Assembly (NCBI GenBank): GCA_025786725.1
Contig: JAHLTZ010000004.1
Span: 372,001 to 436,000 of the forward strand
Reading direction: 5' to 3'
DNA: 64,000 nt
Source: Syncephalis fuscata S228
Lineage: Eukaryota > Fungi > Zoopagomycota
Part shown: positions 1-60,337 of the stretch, piece by piece
How the letters are laid out: the number at the start of each line of letters is the position of its first letter
Numbering within the stretch: the first letter of the stretch is position 1
Program-made: the position numbers and the translations under genes
Notes under the pieces: model-generated
What the model was told of the DNA's origin: nothing
What the model saw: only the letters and a program-made list of their open reading frames with translations
Databases searched by the model: none

Positions 1-361
1 TACCTGCAATGCTATGGTTGTTCATTTCCGTATGGTAGCCTCAGCCTACCTACGTACCCATGCTGATGACTATTTACCATTTATTGAATTTGGACAAACT
101 ATAGAGCAATATTGTTCACACCATGTAGAAGCATTTGGTCGTGAATCAGAAGAAATGCACATTATCGCTCTTACAAAGGCACTAAAAGCCAAAGTTCAAG
201 TGGTATATTTGGATAACTCGACAGCCAACGATGGTCAAGTAAACGTTCATACCTTTGATGGATTGGATGAGACATCTTCCGCAGTATCACCCAGTGTAAA
301 TGAAGGCACGATTACACTACTTTATCGGCCAGGTCATTATGATATTCTATACCGAAGATAG
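1..361 (+). CDS. OTUB1: Otubain-type deubiquitinase (peptidase C65), 3' end only
   Basis: C-terminal LLYRPGHYDILY (catalytic His motif), plus YCSHHVEAFGRESEEMHIIALTKAL and VVYLD, typical of otubains; the 5' part lies outside the window. Confidence 0.9.
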   Translation, partial: TCNAMVVHFRMVASAYLRTHADDYLPFIEFGQTIEQYCSHHVEAFGRESEEMHIIALTKALKAKVQVVYLDNSTANDGQVNVHTFDGLDETSSAVSPSVNEGTITLLYRPGHYDILYRR

Positions 362-446
362 TCAATTATAATCATATCGTTTATATAAAATTTTAATTTA
401 ATTTAATGTTTTCCATTTCAAAAAAATCACTTTTTATTTTACTACT

Positions 447-971
447 ATGATGATCTCAGCCCGTAGCATTTATTCTATGGCGGCACACCAACCCATGAAT
501 CGCTTAGGGATTCAGGCCCGCGGTTATGCGGTTAAATTGAGTGCAAGTGCTGCGGCTGCCGCCGCCGCTGCCGCCGCCGCCACTAAAGCAAAAAAAAGTA
601 TTGACGCGTCGTTGGGCGGTGATCCACGCAATCAGCTACTTAAGCGTATGCTATTCGAAACACCGGTACGTCAACCAACGATCACGGCCGAGATAGAAGA
701 GCGTCAACAAGTTATTGAGCGGGCTTGGCTACAAGAACAAGAGCGCTATGAAGCACAACATCGCCAAGCATTAGAGCGCCAACGTGAACATATCATAGAA
801 GCACATAATGAGCTTAAACAAACGAGTATGTATTTATATCAGGGCGCTACCAATTTTGAGCATGGTCTAGTCTTTCCGCGTCAAATGCGTGCCCCTACAA
901 ATACACCAGCCACTACTGGTTGGAATTACAGCTTTAAAGCACCTACACCAAAATCATCATCATCTACTTAA
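447..971 (+). CDS. Mitochondrial large ribosomal subunit protein mL40 (yeast MrpL28-like)
   Basis: Arg/Ala-rich mitochondrial presequence; IERAW...AHNELKQTSMYLYQGA...FPRQMRAPTNTP...WNY matches the mL40 pattern. Confidence 0.75.
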   Translation: MMISARSIYSMAAHQPMNRLGIQARGYAVKLSASAAAAAAAAAAATKAKKSIDASLGGDPRNQLLKRMLFETPVRQPTITAEIEERQQVIERAWLQEQERYEAQHRQALERQREHIIEAHNELKQTSMYLYQGATNFEHGLVFPRQMRAPTNTPATTGWNYSFKAPTPKSSSST

Positions 972-1191
972 TAAATAAATACATATTAACTAAACTTAAT
1001 TAATTAATTAACATTGTTGTGTGCATGTGTTTGTGGGTGGGTGGGCGATTTTGATCACTTTTATCATTAATGATGGTGTGCACAACACTCAACCTTCTCC
1101 TTTTACTCTCTCTCTCTCTTTCTCTCTCTCTCTATCCAGTCAACGATTACTACGCTGTTTCTCTAAGGATTCACCTGTAGTCATCTTAATC

Positions 1192-2254
1192 ATGCGTACT
1201 TACAAGGAAAAGTACTACCGTTTAAGAAATCGGTTCTACGCGTTATCTAGTGTAAGTGCCAGATCGCGTTCATGATGGTCATTAACTCAACTCGCTGTCT
1301 CTATATGCATTAGAGACGAGAAAAGATACAAAATGAAGTCAATAGCGTGCATACACAGCTTCGCGAGTTTGAGAAAGAAAAAAGTAACTATTAGCAATAG
1401 CGTGGTTACTATATACTTATTAACACTATCGATGTTCATAATAGCCATATACTGGACTTGATGATGGATATTAAAATGTATCCCATTTCTACTGACAGGT
1501 AACTGAATTGAATTAGCAACAGTATTGTACACTATTGACTGGTTTATATTGTAGTTCATCCGATGAAATGGATCAACCTATAAAGACTGAATCTGTAAAG
1601 ACTGAATCCATAAAAACCGAGCCTAAAGAGAACAATGAGGAACATATTGATGCTATAGAGGCGTTGAAGCTGTCAGAGTCTGATACAAACGAGCCTACTG
1701 TATCGCCTAATCGATTTGAATGTAAATAGATGATTTATATATTAATGCAATGCATAATAGATGATTAATACTGTCTATAGATATTCGTAAAGAATTCTGT
1801 CCGGATAAAGATGCTTCATTTTTGCGAGTTCATGTAAAGCGAAAGCGACTATCTCATTTTATTAAACAGGTTATTATCTAATATCTAGTTGACTCTGTCT
1901 ATAACTACTAACTGTATATTTGTTATTACTATTGCTATATTATCGTTATTATAGATAGTTGAAACAACAAAAACAAATCAATCTGCCATTAAAGAAAGTG
2001 GAAATGATAGGAATGGAAGTAATAACCATACTATGTTAAATAGTAATACAAACAGTCGTGGCCATCATCATCCTCATCATTTAATGATTAATAATACAAA
2101 TAGTCGTAATCATCATCATATAACGACTAATAACAGTACAAGTAATCATCCTATATCAATTCATAACGACGATCATGCTGCCATAGATGATACACTAATA
2201 TCTGGAGATAATATGGATGATAAACCAAAGAGACGACGACGAGCCCGTGTAAGT

Positions 2255-15683: not shown

Positions 15684-18600
15684 ATGCTGTCGCCGTTGCT
15701 TCAGCAATCTATACGCAGGGCACTGCGTCCTGCGGCATCCTCGTTACGTGCAGCATATCGACCACCTGCGTTTGGCCTATTTGCCACCCAACGTGCACAA
15801 TATGCTACCGCATCGCCCAACAACAGTGAGTCCTTTTTACAAGGTAGTTCGGCCAACTACGTTGATGAAATGTACCGAGCCTGGCGACATGATCCAAGCT
15901 CGGTGCATTTATCATGGCAAACTTACTTTAAAAACATTGCCGGTGGTGCACCACCCGGCCAGGCCTACCAAGCTCCGCCAACACTTGTACCCGGCAGTGT
16001 AGTGATGCCTGCAGGTACGGCTATAGGAGGAGCGGCTGCAGTGAAGTCGGCGACTAGTCAATCAGACGACATTTTCGACCATCTTAAAGTGCAACTATTG
16101 GTACGTGCCTACCAAATGCGCGGTCATCACTTGGCCAGACTAGATCCACTGGGCATTTTGGACGCAGATCTTGATTCCTCGTTTCCACAAGAATTAGAAA
16201 TTGAAAACTATGGATTTACGGCCAAGGATCTTGATCGTGAGATTACACTTGGGCCAGGCATGCTTCCAGGCTTCATTACCTACGAACGACCTACGATGAA
16301 GCTACGTGAAATTATTGAGCATCTTAAAGAAATATACTGTAAGCATTAAATTAAATTGAAATAAATAAACATGTATGCTAATTAATTAACGTGTCTTTTA
16401 GGTGGCTCTATCGGTATTGAGTATTGCCATATTCCAGATCGCAACCTATGTAACTGGATTCGTCAACGAATCGAGATTCCAACGCGTTATCGCTACTCTG
16501 TTGACGAAAAGCGTATGATTCTTGACCGCCTTATTTGGTCGGATTCATTTGAACGTTTTGTTGCTAGTAAATTCCCAAGCGAGAAGCGTTTTGGTCTTGA
16601 GGGCTGCGAATCTCTTATTCCTGGTATGAAGGCATTGATTGATCGTAGTGTTGATCTAGGCATTCGTTCGATTGTTATGGGTATGCCGCATCGTGGACGT
16701 CTTAATGTACTTAGTAATGTCGTTCGCAAGCAGAATGAATCCATCTTTTGCGAATTCAGTGGCGTACAAGGCCCATCAGAAGTCGAAGGCTCGGGCGATG
16801 TTAAATACCATCTTGGTATGAACTACGATCGACCCACACCGAGTGGCAAACGTGTACACTTGTCACTTGAAGCAAATCCATCGCATTTGGAGGCTGTGGA
16901 TCCAGTTGTACTGGGCAAGACACGTGCACTTCAATTCTACGCGGGAGATGAGCCAGAGCGTACTCATAGTATGGGCGTATTAATGCACGGCGATGCGGCA
17001 TTTGCTGCTCAAGGTGTTGTTTACGAAACACTTGGCATGTCCGACTTGCCATCCTATACTACAGGCGGTACAATCCACGTTGTTGTTAATAATCAAATTG
17101 GATTTACAACTGATCCTCGTTTTGCTCGCTCTACACCCTATTGTACCGATGTGGCCAAGGTAGTCAACGCGCCAGTATTCCACGTCAACGGCGATGACGT
17201 TGAAGCTGTGGTATTTGTATGCCAACTAGCTGCAGAATGGCGTCAAACATTCAAGAAGGATGTTGTTGTCGATATTGTTTGCTATCGTAAACAAGGCCAC
17301 AACGAAACAGACCAGCCAAGCTTTACCCAACCATTGATGTACCGTAAAATTAAAGAACAAAAGCCAGCACTACAGCTCTATGAAGAGCGTCTTCTTAACG
17401 AAGGCTCATTCACTGCTGATGAAATTAAACAGATGAAGGACCGTGTATGGAAGATGCTTGAAGAGTCGTATTCAGCCAGCAAGAACTACGAACCTACACC
17501 ACGCGAATGGATGGCCAGTATCTGGAATGGCTTCAAGTCACCTAGAGAATTGGCGAATGAAACTACGCGTACCTACCCAACTGGTGCTCCAAGAGATATG
17601 CTAGAACATATTGGCCGTGTTATTAGTTCATATCCAAACGACTTTAATGTGCATCCTAATCTGGCACGTATTCTTAAAACACGTCGCAAAACTATTGATG
17701 AAGGTGCCAACATCGATTGGCCAACAGCTGAAGCGTTAGCATTTGGCAGTCTGCTTATGGAAGGCAAGCACGTACGACTTAGTGGCCAGGATGTAGAGCG
17801 CGGTACATTCTCTCAACGCCATGCTGTTCTACATAACCAGGATAACGAACAACAATACATTTCGCTTGGTCGACTTGATCCACAACAAGCACCATTTACC
17901 ATTTGTAACTCTTCGCTGTCAGAGTTTGGCGCACTCGGTTACGAGTATGGCTATTCGCTTGTCAGCCCAAATGCGCTAGTTATGTGGGAGGCGCAATTTG
18001 GTGACTTTGCCAACAATGCCCAATGCATTATTGATCAGTTTATTGCATCTGGCGAAAAGAAATGGCTGCAACGTACTGGTCTTACTATGCTTTTGCCACA
18101 CGGCTATGACGGCCAAGGTCCAGAACATAGCAGTGGACGCATTGAACGTTTCTTACAGCTATGTGACGACAATCCATACCACTATCCAACACCAGAAAAG
18201 TTGGCGCGACAACACCAGGACTGTAATATGCAAGTTGTATATGCCAGTACACCGGCTAATTACTTCCATGCATTACGTCGTCAATTATTCCGCGACTTCC
18301 GTAAGCCTATGATTGTTTTCACTTCAAAATCATTGCTTCGCCACCCATTGGCCCGCTCAACACTTGCTGAAATGACTGACGAGACTATTTTCCGTCGTTA
18401 CATCCCTGAGGAAGACGTGAAGCAAGAGCTTGTGGCCAATGATAAGATTCGTCGACACATTCTTTGCTCAGGCCAAGTCTACTACAAGTTGGTACAAGCG
18501 CGTGAACAACGCGGTATTAAGGATGTGGCCATCAGCCGAGTGGAGCAAATCAGTCCATTCCCTTACGATTTGATTAAGCCACATTTGGACCAGTATCCAA

Positions 18601-18815
18601 ACGCTGAAATCTTCTGGTGCCAAGAAGAGCCGCTAAACTTTGGTGCTTGGACCTACGTTGAGCCGCGCATTATCACGGCCATGCAGGAAACCCAACACCA
18701 CAATAAGGCCAAGGTTTCGTATGCTGGCCGTGGTCCTACAGGTGCAGTTGCCACTGGCAAAAAGAAGCTGCATCTTAAGCAGGAAGAAATGATATTAGAT
18801 GCTGCGCTTTCTTAA
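15684..18815 (+). CDS. KGD1: Mitochondrial 2-oxoglutarate dehydrogenase E1
   Basis: Presequence; [39 protein letters not shown] (ThDP motif), WEAQFGDF; one intron at about 16339-16401. Confidence 0.98.
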
Positions 18816-19669
18816 ACTGCAATTAAGCTTCTGATTTATAAGAATTTTATTAGTAAAGCAAATTATTAAAAAAGCAATGATTCTTTCGAATGTTATATGT
18901 ATCACAGTATAGTATATAGCACATTAAATTTAAAATAATAACTATAATAGCGAAAGCGGTTTATTATTATTATGTTTTAATGGCATTGTTTAACATCCAA
19001 ACTAGACGTAGCTTTATAAAATAGCTTATTCTTTTCATAGCAAAACAAGCACAAATCGTTTAGAAAAGCATTTGTAATTATTTTTGGGTTATAGTAAACC
19101 AAACTATCAACATCTTCTATACGGCTTCGTAGGTGCCATGTCCTATTCATTTAATTAACTGCGGCAACTAAAAGTAGTTTCTTTTAAGACATAGCTAGAT
19201 AATAGGCTAAAGAACAAAAATAGTAAATTACTGCATATTAATTAGTCTGTTGTCCGCTCTCGTTTTATCCATTCTTTTTCAATAAAGTTTACTACTAGTT
19301 CTCAATCACACTATTATAACTCTAATATTAGTATATCTACTTGAGTAATATTTGCTAATTTTTACGCTTAAATAAAATATGAATATAAACCCAACAAATT
19401 GATAAAATATAATTAAATAGAACCATGTATTTATTACTACAACTTTGTATAGTTGAATAGATCCAATTAAAACTAGACTTGTTGGTAATATAATAAAATC
19501 ACTGATTAAAGGTTGAATAACTGGGGCATTGGATGAAGCTTGCTATAGATATGTAAGTAGGCTAAGCGGCAGCTGTTGAATGGTCTTGTTTTCCGCCGAA
19601 TACATACCTAAAGTATATTGAACTAGCAGCTTGATTATGCTACCAGTTCTAACGCCATGGGTATACCGG

Positions 19670-21764
19670 TTAAATTATTTCTGTAAATGCATATAAGTAA
19701 TGAATAAACCAGTAATATACACTATTGCTTACCTCCTGTTAATATTGAATTATTAATGCATATAGTACATATCATGTAGTTAGTGCATAGTCAATTTATA
19801 TACAATATTACATACCAACTATTAATATTAAATCGTTGGCAGGCACAATACGTAATAAGAATTAGTGTATAGTGGATTTATATATAATACCACTTACGGC
19901 CTATTAGTATTAAATGGCCGGTACCAACAATGAATATTTAATTAGCACATAATTAGCCAAGATACCATACCACTTATATCCTATTGATATCCGGTTGTCG
20001 ATACACAGAATGTATAGCATGCAATTAGTGCATAGGCAATTATTATAAAATCTCACTTACGGCCTATTATATCAAGTTGTTAACAAACACATTAATAGCA
20101 TATGGTTAATGCATAGCTAATTAATATACTATGCCACTTACAGACTGTTAATATTAAGTCATTAATAGACACAATAAATAGCTTTAGGTTAGTGCATAAA
20201 CAAATAATATGGAACATCACTTACAGTCTATTAATATTAAGTTGTTGATACAAACAGTGAAAAAGTAATTAATGTATAATCATATAATATAAAATATTGC
20301 TTACAACCTATTGGTATCAAGCCATTAATGCACGCAGTAAATAGTAAGCAATTAGTTAGTAGTCAATGAAGATACAATAGCACTTACGAGCTATCAATAT
20401 TAGATTATAGATACACACAGTATATGGTATGTAATTAATGCATAGTCAATTTCTATATAATGCCACTTACGATCTATCAATGTAGGCCATTGACGAATTC
20501 AGCGTATAGTATGTAGTCAGCACATAACCAATTGCTATAGAATATCACTTACCGACTATTGATATTAGTAGTAGTATACGCGGCATATATAGTTTAATTA
20601 ATGTACAGTTAAATAACATACAGCTTTACTTACATTCTATTTGCATTAAGTTATTAATTCATATAGTATATAAAATGTAGTTAGTACATAACTCATCAGT
20701 ATGCAAAGTTGCTTACGACCTATTATATCAAATTATTAATATGCACAATAAATAGTATTTAACAGTATACAGCTAATTGGTATAAAATGTTACTTACAAG
20801 CTATTAATATTAGTTATTGATACGCGCAGCACATAGCATGTGATTAGTACTTAGCCAATTAATATACAATGTTACTCACATTCTGTTAATATCAAATCGT
20901 CAACATAAATATAATGAGCATGTAATTAGCAGATAGCCACTAGTATATAATATCACCTACTATCTATTAATATCAAGTTGTTGATGTAAACAGCACATAG
21001 AATGCGATCAGTATATATCCAATTAATATATAATGTCACTTACTGCCTATTAGCATTAAGTCATTGATACACACAATGTATAACATATTAGCAATGCATG
21101 GCTAGTTGTTATATAATGTTACTTACAGCCTGTTAGTATCAGATTGTCGATACACATAATAGATAGCATGCAATTAGCGTATGGCTAATTGATATATAGC
21201 GTCACTTACCAGCTATTAGTATTAAATTGTTGATACACACAGTATATGGCATGTAATTAGTGTATAGTTAATTAATATGCAATAGTACTTACATTCTATT
21301 GATTTTTGTTTGGCAAAAAAATATTTAGTTAAATTGTCAGCTGACATACAGTAAAGCTTACGTCCTAGTAATGTCCATTCAGCATATTAGCATGACAAAT
21401 ATAACATTTGATTCGCTAGCTTATAATAAACTTACTTTTAGCCAATAGTACTGATTTAGTCATGTACATTAAAAGTAATATTTAATTAGCAAATATATAG
21501 CTATTAATGTTTTAAACTACGGGCTGATACATGTGTTTTTACGTTTGTCATGTGTATGATGGTAGCATACAATAAGTATTGGAACAGTAATCCATCACCA
21601 TGACTTACCATCTAATAGTATCTTTGGTTAAACATAGCGTTATTGTATATTTATTATAATTTCGACATACCACGACGACCTAGAGCTGGCTTAGCATCCA
21701 CAGAGGTTGTAGTAATTGCAAGGGCCATGGCAAGGGCGCAAACGACGGCAATAGAAAGCTTCAT
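19670..21764 (-). CDS. Micro-exon gene encoding a 62-aa secreted Cys-rich prepropeptide (26 predicted exons, 23 of 3 nt)
   Basis: Exon 1 (21764-21671) encodes MKLSIAVVCALAMALAITTTSVDAKPALGRR+G, followed by repeated YAG|NNN|GTRRG units. Joined CDS is 189 nt with no internal stop: ...DALLLAKR-QSGCNKSCQFDPRYFCRCLGEII*. One donor (19977) reads AT rather than GT; the CCC exon at 21521 has a weak GTAGTT donor. Confidence 0.85.
19733..21295. repeat. Degenerate tandem repeat, about 80-83 bp period, about 19 copies (each unit = one intron + one 3-nt exon)
   Basis: Plus-strand consensus approximately ctattaatattaagttattgatacacacagtatatagcatgtaattagtgcatagctaattaatataatgccacttac-NNN. Confidence 0.93.
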
Positions 21765-24073: not shown

Positions 24074-25083
24074 ATGGGCGATACGTGGAAAGTAAATGCA
24101 ACCAATCTATTTGGTATTCTGTTGCATCCGGATGGTGAAATGGATTTTCTTGGTTTTGTCAATAGAAAACAACAGAATTACGAGACAGCTAAAGATGAAG
24201 TTCAAAAGCGGCTGACAGTGGTTCAATTTCAAATGATGCTTAGTGTTGTACTGGGAACTCTATTTGCCTACAACTTAAGACGTTTATTACAGCATATTAC
24301 AGTTCAATCGTACAGCCTTCTCGACTTGTGCTATTTCATTCCATCTTTTTTGGGAATTGGATATACTATGTTAGCTATAGTGGCAGCACTAACCAACCAT
24401 CTAAATTGTAGAATAATTGTTTGGTATATTATGATAGCCATAAGCTTTTCAATGTTTTGCAACAGTATTGTTATACTATACAAAACCTATATTGTGCTGC
24501 TGTCGCAACGCCGAGTAGCCATTTGTGGCACCGTTTGTATTTTACCACAACTTTTCTTCAGTCTTGTTGCATGCAAACACTCTTATATTACATTGGAAAA
24601 ACAAGGCGGCTGTGTTTTTAACTACAATACCACTGTTGCGCTGTACTGGTTCACTATGATGATACCTAGCAACATACTTTTTTCAGGCATATTCAGCGCT
24701 GTAGTCTATAAACATTATAAGAAATACGGCTCCGATGCATAGAGAAGATTAGCCCGTAATGGTATTCAAATAATGTGTTTGGTAGTTCTCTGTAATATAG
24801 TATGCAGCATTGCTATTTTTTTAAAAATAGGAGAATCATTTGCAAGTAATTTTTATGTTTTTGACTGGTAAGTAGTTCATATAATTTAAAATGTATCTAA
24901 CGTTTATATAGGTATATTACAGCAACAATACTTGTGAGCGACGTTACGAAAAAGCGTACAAACAGCATACCCAACACTTCAAGAAGGAGTAGGCTGAATA
25001 ATATTTACAGTACTGACGTTGATATAAACCAGACCAGAACGGGATATTCTAGTCGGTTTGCAATTATCAGTAACTATATATAA
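24074..25083 (+). pseudogene. 7TM GPCR-like gene copy A with in-frame TAG at a conserved Trp codon (pseudogene, or base error)
   Basis: Colinear with copies B and C; GATGCA-TAG-AGAAGA at 24740-24742 versus GACGCA-TGG-AAAAGA; frame, intron and last exon otherwise intact. Confidence 0.7.
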
Positions 25084-25902: not shown

Positions 25903-26912
25903 ATGACTAAGGAATGGGAAAAAGACGCTGAAAGACTGCTTGGTATTCCATTGCATCCACTTGGTGAAATAGATTTCTTTAGTTTTGTCAATATAAGAAC
26001 ACATAGCGATGCAACACCTAAAGCCGAAGCTCAGCATCGACTGATAGGAATTCAAATTCAACTGACATTTAGCATCGTGTTTGGAATTCTATCTGTTTAC
26101 AATCTAAGACGTTTAATCCAACAAATCGTAACTCACTCGTACGGTTTTCTCGATTTGTTTTATTTCATTCCGTCTTCTTTAGGCCTTGTATATGCTATGA
26201 TAGTTATGATCGCATCACTAACCAGTCATATGAATTGTAGGATAATTGTTTGGTATGCTATGACAGCCATTAGCATTTCGATGTTTTGCAACAGTATTAT
26301 TATACTTTACAAAACCTATCTCGTGCTATTGTCGCAACGCTGGGTAGCTATTTGCGGCACTATTTGCATTCTACCACAGCTCTTCTTTAGTCTTATTGCA
26401 TGTAAATATTCGCGTATTACATTGGAAGAATACTATGGTTGTTTTTATAACTATGACGATCTTGTCTCACTCTGTTGGTTTGGTATAATGATTCCCAGCA
26501 ACATACTTTTTTCGGGCATATTCAGCGTCGTGACATATAAACACTATAAAAGATACGGTTCTGACGCATGGAAAAGATTAGCTCGTGACAATATTCAGAT
26601 AATGTCTCTGGTGGTTCTTTGTAACATAATATGCTGTATTATTGCTATTTCTAAAATAGGGAATCATTTTTCAGGAAAGTTTTATGTTGTTGATTGGTAA
26701 GTATTCAATATAGTTCAAAATGTACCTAACATTTATCTAGGTATATTACATCAACGATACTTGTAAAATATGTTACGAAAAGACGTGCAACCAATATATA
26801 TAGCAATTCGGCAAAAAATGGACCAAATGATATTTACAGCATGGACGTTGATGTTAATAATACCAAAACGAACTATTCTAGCCGATTTGCAATTACTACC
26901 AATTATATATAA
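25903..26912 (+). CDS. 7TM GPCR-like protein copy B (about 321 aa; intron 26697-26740)
   Basis: Seven hydrophobic segments; Cys at the top of TM3 (MNCRII) and in ECL2 (YYGCF), the GPCR-type disulfide arrangement; TM7 is completed after a 44-nt GT-AG intron. Confidence 0.8.
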
Positions 26913-27745: not shown

Positions 27746-28755
27746 ATGACTAAGGAATGGGAAAAAGACGCTGAAAGACTGCTTGGTATTCCATTGCATC
27801 CACTTGGTGAAATGGACTTTTTTAGTTTTGTCAACATAAGAACACATAGCGATGCAACACCTAAAGCCGAAGCTCAGCATCGATTGATAGGGCTTCAGCT
27901 TCAACTGACATTTGGCATTATATTTGGAATTTTATCTAGCTACAATATAAGCCGTTTGGTTCAACGTATTATAGCTCACTCATACAACTTTATCGATTTT
28001 TTTTATTTTATTCCATCTTCTTTAGGCGTTGGATACGCTATAACAGTCATATTGGCAACACTAACCGAACATCTAAATTGTAGGACAATTATTTGGTATG
28101 CTATAATGGCTGTAAGTATCTCGATGTTTTGCAACAGTACTATTATACTTTACAAAACCTATCTCGTGCTATTGTCGCAACGCTGGGTAGCTATTTGCGG
28201 CACTATTTGCATTCTACCACAGCTCTTCTTTAGTCTTATTGCATGCAAATACTCGTACATTACAGTAGAAGAATATTACGGCTGTGATTTTAAGTATGAT
28301 ATCATTGTTTCATTATGCTGGTTTGGCGTAATGATTCCCAGCAACATACTTTTTTCGGGCATATTCAGCGTCGTGACCTATAAACGTTATAAAAGATACG
28401 GTTATGACGCATGGAAACAATTAAACCGCGATAGTATTCAGATAATGGCTTTGGTGGTCCTCTGTAACATAATATGCTGTATTATTATTGTTTTTAGAAT
28501 AGGGGGTCATTCTTCAGGAAAAGTCTATATTGTTGATTGGTAAGTATTCAATATAGTTCAAAATGTACCTAACATTTATCTAGGTATACTACATCAACGA
28601 TACTTGTAAAATATGTTACGAAAAGACGTGCAACCAATATATATAGCAATTCGGCAAAAAATGGACCAAATGATATTTACAGCATGGACGTTGATGTTAA
28701 TAATACCAAAACAAACTATTCTAGCCGATTTGCAATTACTACCAATTATATATAA
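27746..28755 (+). CDS. 7TM GPCR-like protein copy C
   Basis: Tandem paralog of copy B at 1843 bp offset, same intron position. Confidence 0.8.
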
Positions 28756-59378: not shown

Positions 59379-60070
59379 ATGAAGTCCTATATCTATTTCG
59401 CTGTCCTTGCTGCTGCCGCTGCTATTGCATTAATCAATGTCGACGCTGCCCCTCAAACTTACACAGCCGACTCCACTTCATATAGCGTTGGTCCTGTCGA
59501 CACCAGCTACAGCACCGGATCAACTACTCCTGGATCATCTGGCGGCTCAAAGACTCCATCAACGCCAACCGGCTCTACTGGAAGTGGCAATGGCGGCAAC
59601 GGTGGCAACGGTGGTAATGGCGGCAATGGCGGTAACAGCAGCAGTGGCGGCAACGGTGGTAATGGCGGCAACGGCGGTAACGGCGGTAACAGCAGCAGTG
59701 GTGGCAATGGTGGTAACGGTGGTAACGGCGGCAATGGTGGTAACAGCAGCAGTGGAAGCAATGGTGGTAACGGCGGCAATAGCGGCTACGGCAGCAGCGG
59801 CAGTGTCGGTCAGGTGGCAGTGGCGGCAATGGTGGCAGCGGCGGTAATGGTGGCAATGGCCAAAACGGCAGCAATGGACAAAACGGTAGCAACGGCCAAA
59901 ACGGCAGCAACGGCTTATATGTCTCCCCACCTCGCGGTTCAAGTGGTGGTAAGCCTCGTCCAGTTGGAGGCTATTATGGCAGTGGCTCTAAAAGCAAGTC
60001 CTACGGCAAGGGTAGTGGTAGCACCACCACTGGTTCCACTGATACCAGCACTGACACTAGCTCCGACTAA
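59379..60070 (+). CDS. Secreted Gly/Asn/Ser-rich protein (GGN repeats), apparent frameshift at about 59805
   Basis: Signal peptide MKSYIYFAVLAAAAAIALINVDA-AP; (GGN)n and NSSS repeats continue in a shifted frame as GGSGGNGG..NGQNGS..GSTDTSTDTSSD* (TAA 60068-60070). Confidence 0.8.
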
Positions 60071-60337
60071 TGGTATACCATCGCTAAACACTGAATTTGC
60101 AATCTAGTGTTTAATACAAAATAACTTCGTCTAAATAAAACATTGAAACATCATTTGTTTGTAGTATGTTGTAATCTACTATCACAGCACCAGTATTTTA
60201 TTATTCAACAATGAGTGCAGCTTACTTTTGATCATTATATTTTGTTGTATAAAATCTATTGTATAAGTTATTAGAATTGACTACTTTTCCAGCTTAAACT
60301 ATCAGCACAAATCCAAATAATCGACAATAATAAAACA

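What the first reader, a model, noticed from the sequence alone, without database searches (positions are those of the whole stretch)
19670..21764. One-exon-per-residue gene: 23 three-nucleotide micro-exons encode a secreted Cys-rich peptide
Seen in sequence (minus strand): a 94-nt signal-peptide exon (21764-21671) is followed by exons ATG 21609-11, CCC 21521-23, a 15-nt exon 21436-50, then 21 consecutive 3-nt exons: GAC 21362, AAT 21293, CTG 21210, GCT 21127, GCA 21044, ATA 20961, AAT 20880, CTT 20798, GTC 20717, AAT 20634, TCG 20553, ATC 20471, CTC 20388, GTT 20305, ACT 20225, TCT 20142, GCC 20061, GAT 19978, GCC 19898, TTG 19816, GAG 19733 (lowest plus-strand coordinate). The last exon starts at 19680. 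Each is preceded by YAG and, except for the weak GTAGTT after CCC and the AT after GAT, followed by GTAAG/GTGAG/GTAGG/GTATG. All introns are phase 1. The joined 189 nt give MKLSIAVVCALAMALAITTTSVDA/KPALGRRDALLLAKR/QSGCNKSCQFDPRYFCRCLGEII* with no internal stop. A dibasic KR site and an ordered Cys pattern emerging from scattered triplets argue against chance. Established knowledge: schistosome micro-exon genes (MEGs) use symmetric short exons in secreted proteins. I know of no gene built from a run of over 20 single-codon exons, and ORF finders and spliced aligners would miss it. Inference: an undescribed effector/peptide gene architecture.
Basis: partly seen in the sequence, partly recalled or inferred. 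Interest (0 to 1): 0.98.

Follow-up and report, generated by a model that had tools for sequence, protein, structure and literature searches.

The report
One-intron-per-codon fungal peptide genes
A fungus that parasitises other moulds has about a hundred or more genes for small secreted peptides in which an intron interrupts nearly every codon, so the peptides hide inside what looks like junk repeat DNA and can gain or lose single amino acids by gaining or losing a repeat unit.

Summary
The genome is Syncephalis fuscata (neighbouring gene 100% identical), a mycoparasite. All 23 three-nucleotide exons lie where stated. An RNA contig from this locus joins three consecutive triplets and the last exon at the predicted sites. 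The paired-unit pattern occurs 3,270 times in the genome (control 0), and 100 loci carry the same leader exon plus donor. In 32 parsed loci, 660 of 702 internal exons are exactly 3 nt. Phase-1 junction codons hold 0 stops in 632 (34.7 expected) and twice the expected cysteines. The introns are copies of one ~79-nt repeat, and close paralogues differ by whole units. Intronless members share leader, cysteine pattern and 3' UTR. It works like schistosome micro-exon genes but is not one. No description was found in the papers searched. This scan's first readers noted the same family on other pieces of this genome. Peptide function is untested.

The parts
21671..21764 (-). Exon 1 (94 nt): signal peptide plus short propeptide ending in RR; conserved across the family
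   Evidence: 85% mean column identity in 23 copies; RNA contigs of family members lie here
21609..21611 (-). 3-nt exon ATG
   Evidence: equivalent exon in paralogues L054, L064
21521..21523 (-). 3-nt exon CCC, weak GTAGTT donor
   Evidence: equivalent position in L054, L064; splicing not seen in RNA
21436..21450 (-). 15-nt exon giving the L-A-K of the second dibasic (KR) site; marks a subfamily
   Evidence: homologous 15-nt exon in L054, L055, L064, L065
19733..21364 (-). Array of 21 consecutive 3-nt phase-1 exons separated by 66-80 nt introns that are copies of one repeat (period about 83 nt); encodes the mature peptide
   Evidence: (introns 68% alike within this gene)
19901..19977 (-). Intron with non-canonical AT donor after the GAT exon; retained in the only RNA contig from this locus
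   Evidence: X1 record 3 runs 19980-19898 without a gap or mismatch; X2 record 9 shows the same letters at the donor
19681..19897 (-). Three introns (19897-19819, 19815-19736, 19732-19681) removed in RNA, with the TTG and GAG exons included
   Evidence: tables 5, 5c, 8: joint 19682/19898 with exactly the four expected letters between
19670..19680 (-). Coding part of the last exon, ending in TAA
19414..19669 (-). 3' UTR, shared by the family
   Evidence: (record 3 covers 19414-19682)

Best explanation
This is one member of a large Syncephalis fuscata family of secreted peptide precursors. A conserved first exon gives the signal peptide and a dibasic processing site. The mature peptide is spelled by a tandem array whose unit is a ~79-nt spliceosomal intron plus a 3-nt exon, always in phase 1. 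Shown: the architecture, splicing of three consecutive junctions at this locus, selection on the joined frame, and gain or loss of whole units between close paralogues. Inferred: each short intron is recognised on its own (GTAAGT donor, branch-point-like YTRAY about 10 nt before AG) and removed in turn. Unequal crossover or conversion between the look-alike introns adds, deletes or recombines single residues without breaking the frame. This diversifies disulfide-bonded helical-hairpin peptides that act on host moulds or competitors. This particular copy has an AT donor that was retained in RNA, and is probably a low-expressed, partly damaged member.
For: RNA: X1 is spliced RNA (OGDH intron removed) and its record 3 joins GCC-TTG-GAG-last exon with 0 mismatches; alignment also stops exactly at the GAT acceptor. 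Genome: 3,270 paired units vs 0 control; 100 leader-plus-donor loci. Frame-blind parse: 660/702 exons are 3 nt and 24 are 6 nt. Junction stops 0/798 vs 45.3 +- 4.9, and 0/632 vs 34.7 +- 4.3 in 22 representatives; the phase-2 frame has 72. Cys junction codons 85 vs 39.2. About 24 of 31 models are open to a stop just inside the shared last exon, most with 4, 6 or 8 Cys. Intronless annotated proteins with the same leader have the same CxxC/CxxxC pattern. Whole-unit indels between paralogues with 93-100% identical flanking introns; intron identity falls with distance, 0.78 to 0.72, with some identical pairs. Intronless member folds as a helical hairpin, pLDDT 84.
Against: Direct splicing evidence is one contig of depth about 3 covering three junctions; the letters upstream of 19980 were not displayed. 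The deep RNA signal on exon 1 may come from intronless members. No full-length transcript, no peptide detection and no activity. About 7 of 31 models have an off-size exon (parse error, assembly error or decay, unresolved). Unit orthology inside repeats is ambiguous, so the exon-versus-intron change rate is only suggestive.
Confidence: 0.88

Rival explanations
1. The genes are real, but diversity is made mainly in RNA, as in schistosome MEGs: symmetric 3-nt exons are skipped in combinations so that one locus yields a peptide library.
For: All exons are multiples of 3 in one phase; only 29 of 579 single skips (5%) create a stop. MEGs use alternative splicing of central exons (10.1101/2023.06.21.545858).
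Against: No skipped junction was seen; record 3 includes both small exons. Donors are uniformly strong (606 GTAAGT). Zero stops and fixed Cys spacing point to selection on the all-included form. DNA-level unit gain and loss is directly visible.
Confidence: 0.2
2. The introns are a selfish, self-amplifying repeat that is merely tolerated because splicing removes it; intronless genes are the working, ancestral form and the arrays bring no benefit.
For: All introns derive from one repeat (73% alike between genes). Intronless members exist and may supply most of the RNA. This copy is weakly expressed and mis-spliced.
Against: Stop avoidance and Cys excess show selection on the products of array genes. 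31 of 32 fetched leader-plus-donor loci have arrays. Insertion of a mobile intron would not give one phase at every codon; unit duplication does. Intronless UTRs are 90-93% identical to an array gene's UTR, which fits recent processed copies as well as ancestry.
Confidence: 0.15
3. The array is a non-coding minisatellite whose unit happens to contain splice-like motifs.
For: Tandem Repeats Finder calls it an 82-83 nt repeat; public gene models miss it.
Against: Spliced RNA at predicted junctions; 0 stops in 632 junction codons; exon length fixed at 3; always placed between a signal-peptide exon and a shared last exon.
Confidence: 0.02

Closest known systems
Schistosome micro-exon genes (MEGs)
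   Same: Parasite; secreted products with only the signal peptide conserved; runs of symmetric micro-exons; multigene family missed by automatic annotation (10.1101/2023.06.21.545858).
   Different: MEG exons are mostly 15 bp (3-81), 10-20 per gene, with introns of 0.1-5 kb, 35 genes, and variation by alternative splicing. Here exons are 3 nt, up to 57 or more per gene, introns are ~79-nt copies of one repeat, 100 or more loci, Cys-patterned products, and variation by unit gain or loss in DNA. No homology.
Scattered fungal microexons (Coprinopsis cinerea)
   Same: 3-nt exons are known to be spliced in fungi: 27 such exons in 26 genes (PMC12230235).
   Different: Those are about one per gene inside ordinary genes; here 20-57 in a row encode the whole mature peptide, about 3,300 units in the genome.
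Disulfide-stapled helical hairpin peptides (alpha-hairpinins / vicilin-buried peptides, nigellin, CS-alpha-alpha toxins)
   Same: Paired CxxxC motifs in many members; model of the intronless member P0125 is helix-loop-helix; Jug r 2 fragment Z 3.3, nigellin-1.1 Z 2.7, wasabi receptor toxin Z 2.6.
   Different: All Z-scores are below 4, which is generic; no Foldseek, Pfam or Atlas hit. The window's own Cys spacing is CxxxC then CxC. A resemblance only.
Introner-like elements (from own knowledge)
   Same: Many near-identical spliceosomal introns in one genome.
   Different: Introners insert at scattered sites in unrelated genes in any phase; these sit head to tail at 3-nt spacing in one phase within one gene family and similarity decays with distance in the array.

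Membership tests
Schistosome MEG | Secreted product with conserved N-terminal signal peptide | tested here: met
   Hydrophobic leader conserved in 23 copies; judged from sequence, no signal-peptide predictor was run
Schistosome MEG | Central run of symmetric micro-exons, multiples of 3 | tested here: met
   684 of 702 parsed exons are 3 or 6 nt, all phase 1
Schistosome MEG | Exons mostly 15 bp separated by long introns (0.1-5 kb) | tested here: not met
   Exons 3 nt, introns mostly 73-80 nt and mutually homologous
Schistosome MEG | Protein variation by alternative exon skipping | tested here: inconclusive
   One low-depth contig shows inclusion and one retained intron; only contigs were available
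Schistosome MEG | Restricted to Schistosomatidae; homology to MEG proteins | tested here: not met
   Fungal genome; leader profile finds only S. fuscata proteins, one ENA contig and two repeat-like hits that were not looked up
Alpha-hairpinin-like peptides | CxxxC-Xn-CxxxC motif | tested here: inconclusive
   Present in L032 and L067 models, variants elsewhere, absent in the window gene and in Cys-free members
Alpha-hairpinin-like peptides | Helix-loop-helix fold with inter-helix disulfides | tested here: inconclusive
   Intronless P0125 model is a hairpin; best Z 3.5, unspecific
Alpha-hairpinin-like peptides | Antimicrobial or inhibitor activity | not testable with these tools
   Needs an assay
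Introner-like elements | Dispersed insertion into unrelated genes in any phase | tested here: inconclusive
   All arrays examined are tandem, phase 1 and in this family; solitary copies in other genes could not be surveyed

The most novel reading that the evidence does not exclude
A repeat-encoded peptide-diversifying system: the coding part of a secreted peptide is held as a minisatellite of intron-plus-3-nt units, so recombination between introns edits the peptide one residue at a time while the frame is protected, and reverse transcription occasionally fixes variants as intronless copies. The same design appears to have arisen independently in other fungi (phase-0 arrays with different intron repeats in soil, root and gut metagenomes), forming an overlooked gene class invisible to standard annotation.
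Probability: 0.5. Interest if true: 0.97.

Novelty: new variant of a known kind. Interest (0 to 1): 0.93.

Why it matters
It shows that a spliceosome can assemble a message from long runs of 3-nt exons, probably the densest intron packing possible, and gives a natural test system for intron definition and order of splicing. It exposes about a hundred or more secreted peptides, many with 4-8 cysteines, that the public annotation of this mycoparasite misses: candidate antifungal or host-manipulating molecules. It offers a way to gain introns in bulk and to evolve peptides residue by residue. The metagenome hits suggest that similar genes are being masked as repeats in other fungal genomes.

Tried and rejected
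Chance minisatellite: rejected. Assembly error at the AT donor: rejected, both runs agree with the assembly. Pfam, Atlas, Foldseek and VIA gave nothing specific. Rfam gave nothing for the intron insertion. The first parser failed and was replaced. Ten paper searches found no description; subscription journals are not covered. Left out by the operators' rule: no search or fold was run with a joined spliced model; exons were searched by reference, and joined frames were built only inside local scripts to count stops and cysteines. The 30-letter loose end of record 5 has no reference and was not searched.

Full report
Source and observation. The neighbouring 2-oxoglutarate dehydrogenase (16515-18815) is 100% identical to a Syncephalis fuscata protein; the assembly has 29.4 Mb in 371 contigs. 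The splice-flanked triplet motif occurs 25 times in the window against 5.2 expected, 19 of them in the array. The model has 26 exons and 189 coding nt. Because all introns are phase 1, each 3-nt exon holds the last two letters of one codon and the first of the next.

RNA evidence at this locus. Run X1 behaves as spliced RNA: the OGDH intron 16339-16401 is removed at GT..AG. Its record 3 (408 nt, depth about 3, no mismatches) covers the 3' UTR and last exon, then carries exactly the four letters expected from the TTG exon and the G of GAG, then continues at 19898. So GCC, TTG, GAG and the last exon are joined and three introns are removed at the predicted sites. The record runs unbroken from 19898 to 19980, so the intron with the AT donor is retained. 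It stops aligning exactly at the GAT acceptor with 52 letters left over, which fits further spliced triplets, but these letters were not shown. Run X2 has unspliced sequence over 19749-19920 and the same AT. Retention would give a 78-aa product with 3 Cys and a stop upstream of three junctions; skipping GAT would give 3 Cys. Contigs drop rare variants, so a minor fully spliced form is not excluded.

A family, not a curiosity. Two units in a row match 3,270 times in the genome and 0 times for the reversed pattern. The leader exon followed by a donor matches at 100 places; looser searches give 282 leader and 266 UTR candidates. I parsed 32 distinct loci by splice-site scores alone, with exon length free from 1 to 45 nt: 660 of 702 internal exons are 3 nt, 24 are 6 nt, and introns peak at 78 and 80 nt. 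About 24 of 31 array models are open; where the fetched locus reaches the shared last exon, the stop is a TAA just inside it. Most have 4, 6 or 8 Cys as CxxC and CxxxC pairs; others are Cys-free and Gly/Ala/Ser-rich (L054, L064) or long and charged with 57 or more exons (L056). Seven models contain an off-size exon. These may be parse errors, decay or assembly slips; X1 shows three single-letter insertions against the assembly nearby.

Selection on the joined frame. Among 798 adjacent 3-nt exon pairs, no phase-1 junction codon is a stop, against 45.3 +- 4.9 after shuffling within genes; the phase-2 frame has 72 stops and nine triplets are themselves stops. With 22 representatives the result is 0 of 632 against 34.7 +- 4.3 (lowest of 10,000 shuffles 18), and Cys codons number 85 against 39.2. 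The middle letter of the triplet, the wobble position in phase 1, is T- or C-rich. Donors are overwhelmingly GTAAGT and a YTRAY motif peaks with its A 10 nt before the exon.

Independent check of the product. A profile of exon 1 finds S. fuscata hypothetical proteins, one ENA contig and two repeat-like hits. Two of the proteins, KAI9591999.1 and KAI9593080.1, have the same leader and Cys-paired mature parts that lie contiguous in the genome. At four further loci the family UTR begins 114-146 nt after the leader. Intronless sisters thus confirm frame and product class without any joining. They also mean that the very deep RNA signal on exon 1 cannot be credited to array genes. The mature part of KAI9591999.1 folds as a helical hairpin (pLDDT 84) with only generic structural matches.

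How it most likely works. The introns are copies of one repeat: 0.76 identical within and 0.73 between genes, falling from 0.78 for neighbours to 0.72 at 15 or more units, with some identical pairs. Close paralogues differ by blocks of 3, 6 or 8 whole units while flanking introns are 93-100% identical. In matched units the triplet letters differ at 14%, 9% and 15% against 2.7% in introns, with the wobble letter lowest; this suggests diversifying change, but unit matching in repeats is uncertain and one pair dominates. I infer that arrays grow and shrink by unequal exchange between introns, each event adding or removing residues in frame and creating a new junction codon. Splicing most likely proceeds intron by intron, since a 3-nt exon cannot hold both flanking complexes at once (established reasoning, not tested); the RNA contig, with one intron kept and its neighbours removed, fits this. 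Intronless members may be processed copies; a SINE-like insertion with target duplications in the introns points to retro-activity, but direction was not established. A role against host or competing fungi is inferred from lifestyle, secretion, copy number and variability.

Comparison and novelty. Schistosome MEGs are the closest kind: secreted, symmetric micro-exons, poorly annotated. They have mostly 15-bp exons, long introns and 35 genes (10.1101/2023.06.21.545858), so membership fails while the working resemblance holds. In Coprinopsis only 27 exons of 3 nt are known, in 26 genes (PMC12230235). No paper on this family was found. I file it as an extreme, independent variant of the micro-exon gene kind; if repeat-driven residue shuffling proves to be its main function it would be a new category.

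Beyond this genome. Many are plain repeats, but 24 contigs carry varied triplets between fungal-type introns unlike this repeat. In 15 contigs of 37-48% GC, 3 of 288 triplets are stops (12-16 expected); in 9 AT-rich contigs 0 of 143 (6-12 expected). L125 has a signal-peptide exon followed by 20 phase-0 units to the contig end. These are unverified leads with no RNA and no taxon.

Limits and steps left out. Direct splicing proof is one low-depth contig. No search or fold was run with a joined spliced model; joined frames were built only in local scripts. The loose end of record 5 has no reference and was not searched. Earlier notes of this scan report the same family on other pieces of this genome; they are unchecked and not counted as support.

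Noticed in passing
L008, L046, L060 (two copies), L063 (two), L067, L069, L070; also L038, L040, L066 (e.g. L046:3047-3439): A ~400-nt element, 84-95% alike between copies, sits at the same spot about 18 nt into the intron repeat, with a ~14-nt target duplication and a T-rich end; SINE-like, apparently targeted to the array introns. No ORF, no Rfam match.
   Followed up: partly
G000 C240:2569, C308:180587, C345:42395, C268:234971, C212:183081, C362:5960, C361:344799, C35:21513, C306:635499: Intronless family members with the same leader, Cys pattern or 3' UTR; possible processed copies.
   Followed up: partly
L125 (Ga0210392_10032348) 1-1634, minus strand: Another organism: signal-peptide exon ending in LEAR followed by 20 phase-0 3-nt units with a different intron repeat; L144 and L131 from the same sample have the same repeat.
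   Followed up: partly
L101, L158, L078: Metagenome contigs where chains of 3-nt units follow what look like related coding segments; not signal-peptide genes by eye.
   Followed up: no
L122:3551-7900: A NACHT-ankyrin (fungal NLR-like) gene is followed directly by a chain of about 29 triplet units.
   Followed up: partly
L120, L130, L088, L072, L106, L113, L139, L151: Very AT-rich contigs (15-21% GC) with chains of varied 3-nt units and ~90-nt intron-like spacers; no stops in phase 0 or 1.
   Followed up: partly
L189, L075, L128, L087, L109, L086: Arrays of up to 50 units with the invariant triplet GGA between ~69-nt intron-like spacers; could encode a homopolymer or be a plain satellite.
   Followed up: no
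L191:579-698 (ENA ERZ1505404): Low-coverage metagenome contig with a related leader and APLAKR site, intronless, stop right after; possibly another Syncephalis.
   Followed up: partly
L052 (G000:C1:496442): Leader exon with donor but no array in the next 4.5 kb; the public model KAI9599469.1 continues with sequence not found there.
   Followed up: partly
window 18867, 18882, 19518: RNA contigs have single-letter insertions against the assembly, and substitutions at 17048 and 18326; likely assembly slips or strain differences.
   Followed up: no
window 25903-26700 and 27746-28543: Two ORFs of the same length (265 aa) in tandem with no Pfam match; 24074-24742 also has none.
   Followed up: no
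window 59379-60107: Gly/Asn/Ser-rich repeat ORF (9- and 18-nt periods).
   Followed up: no
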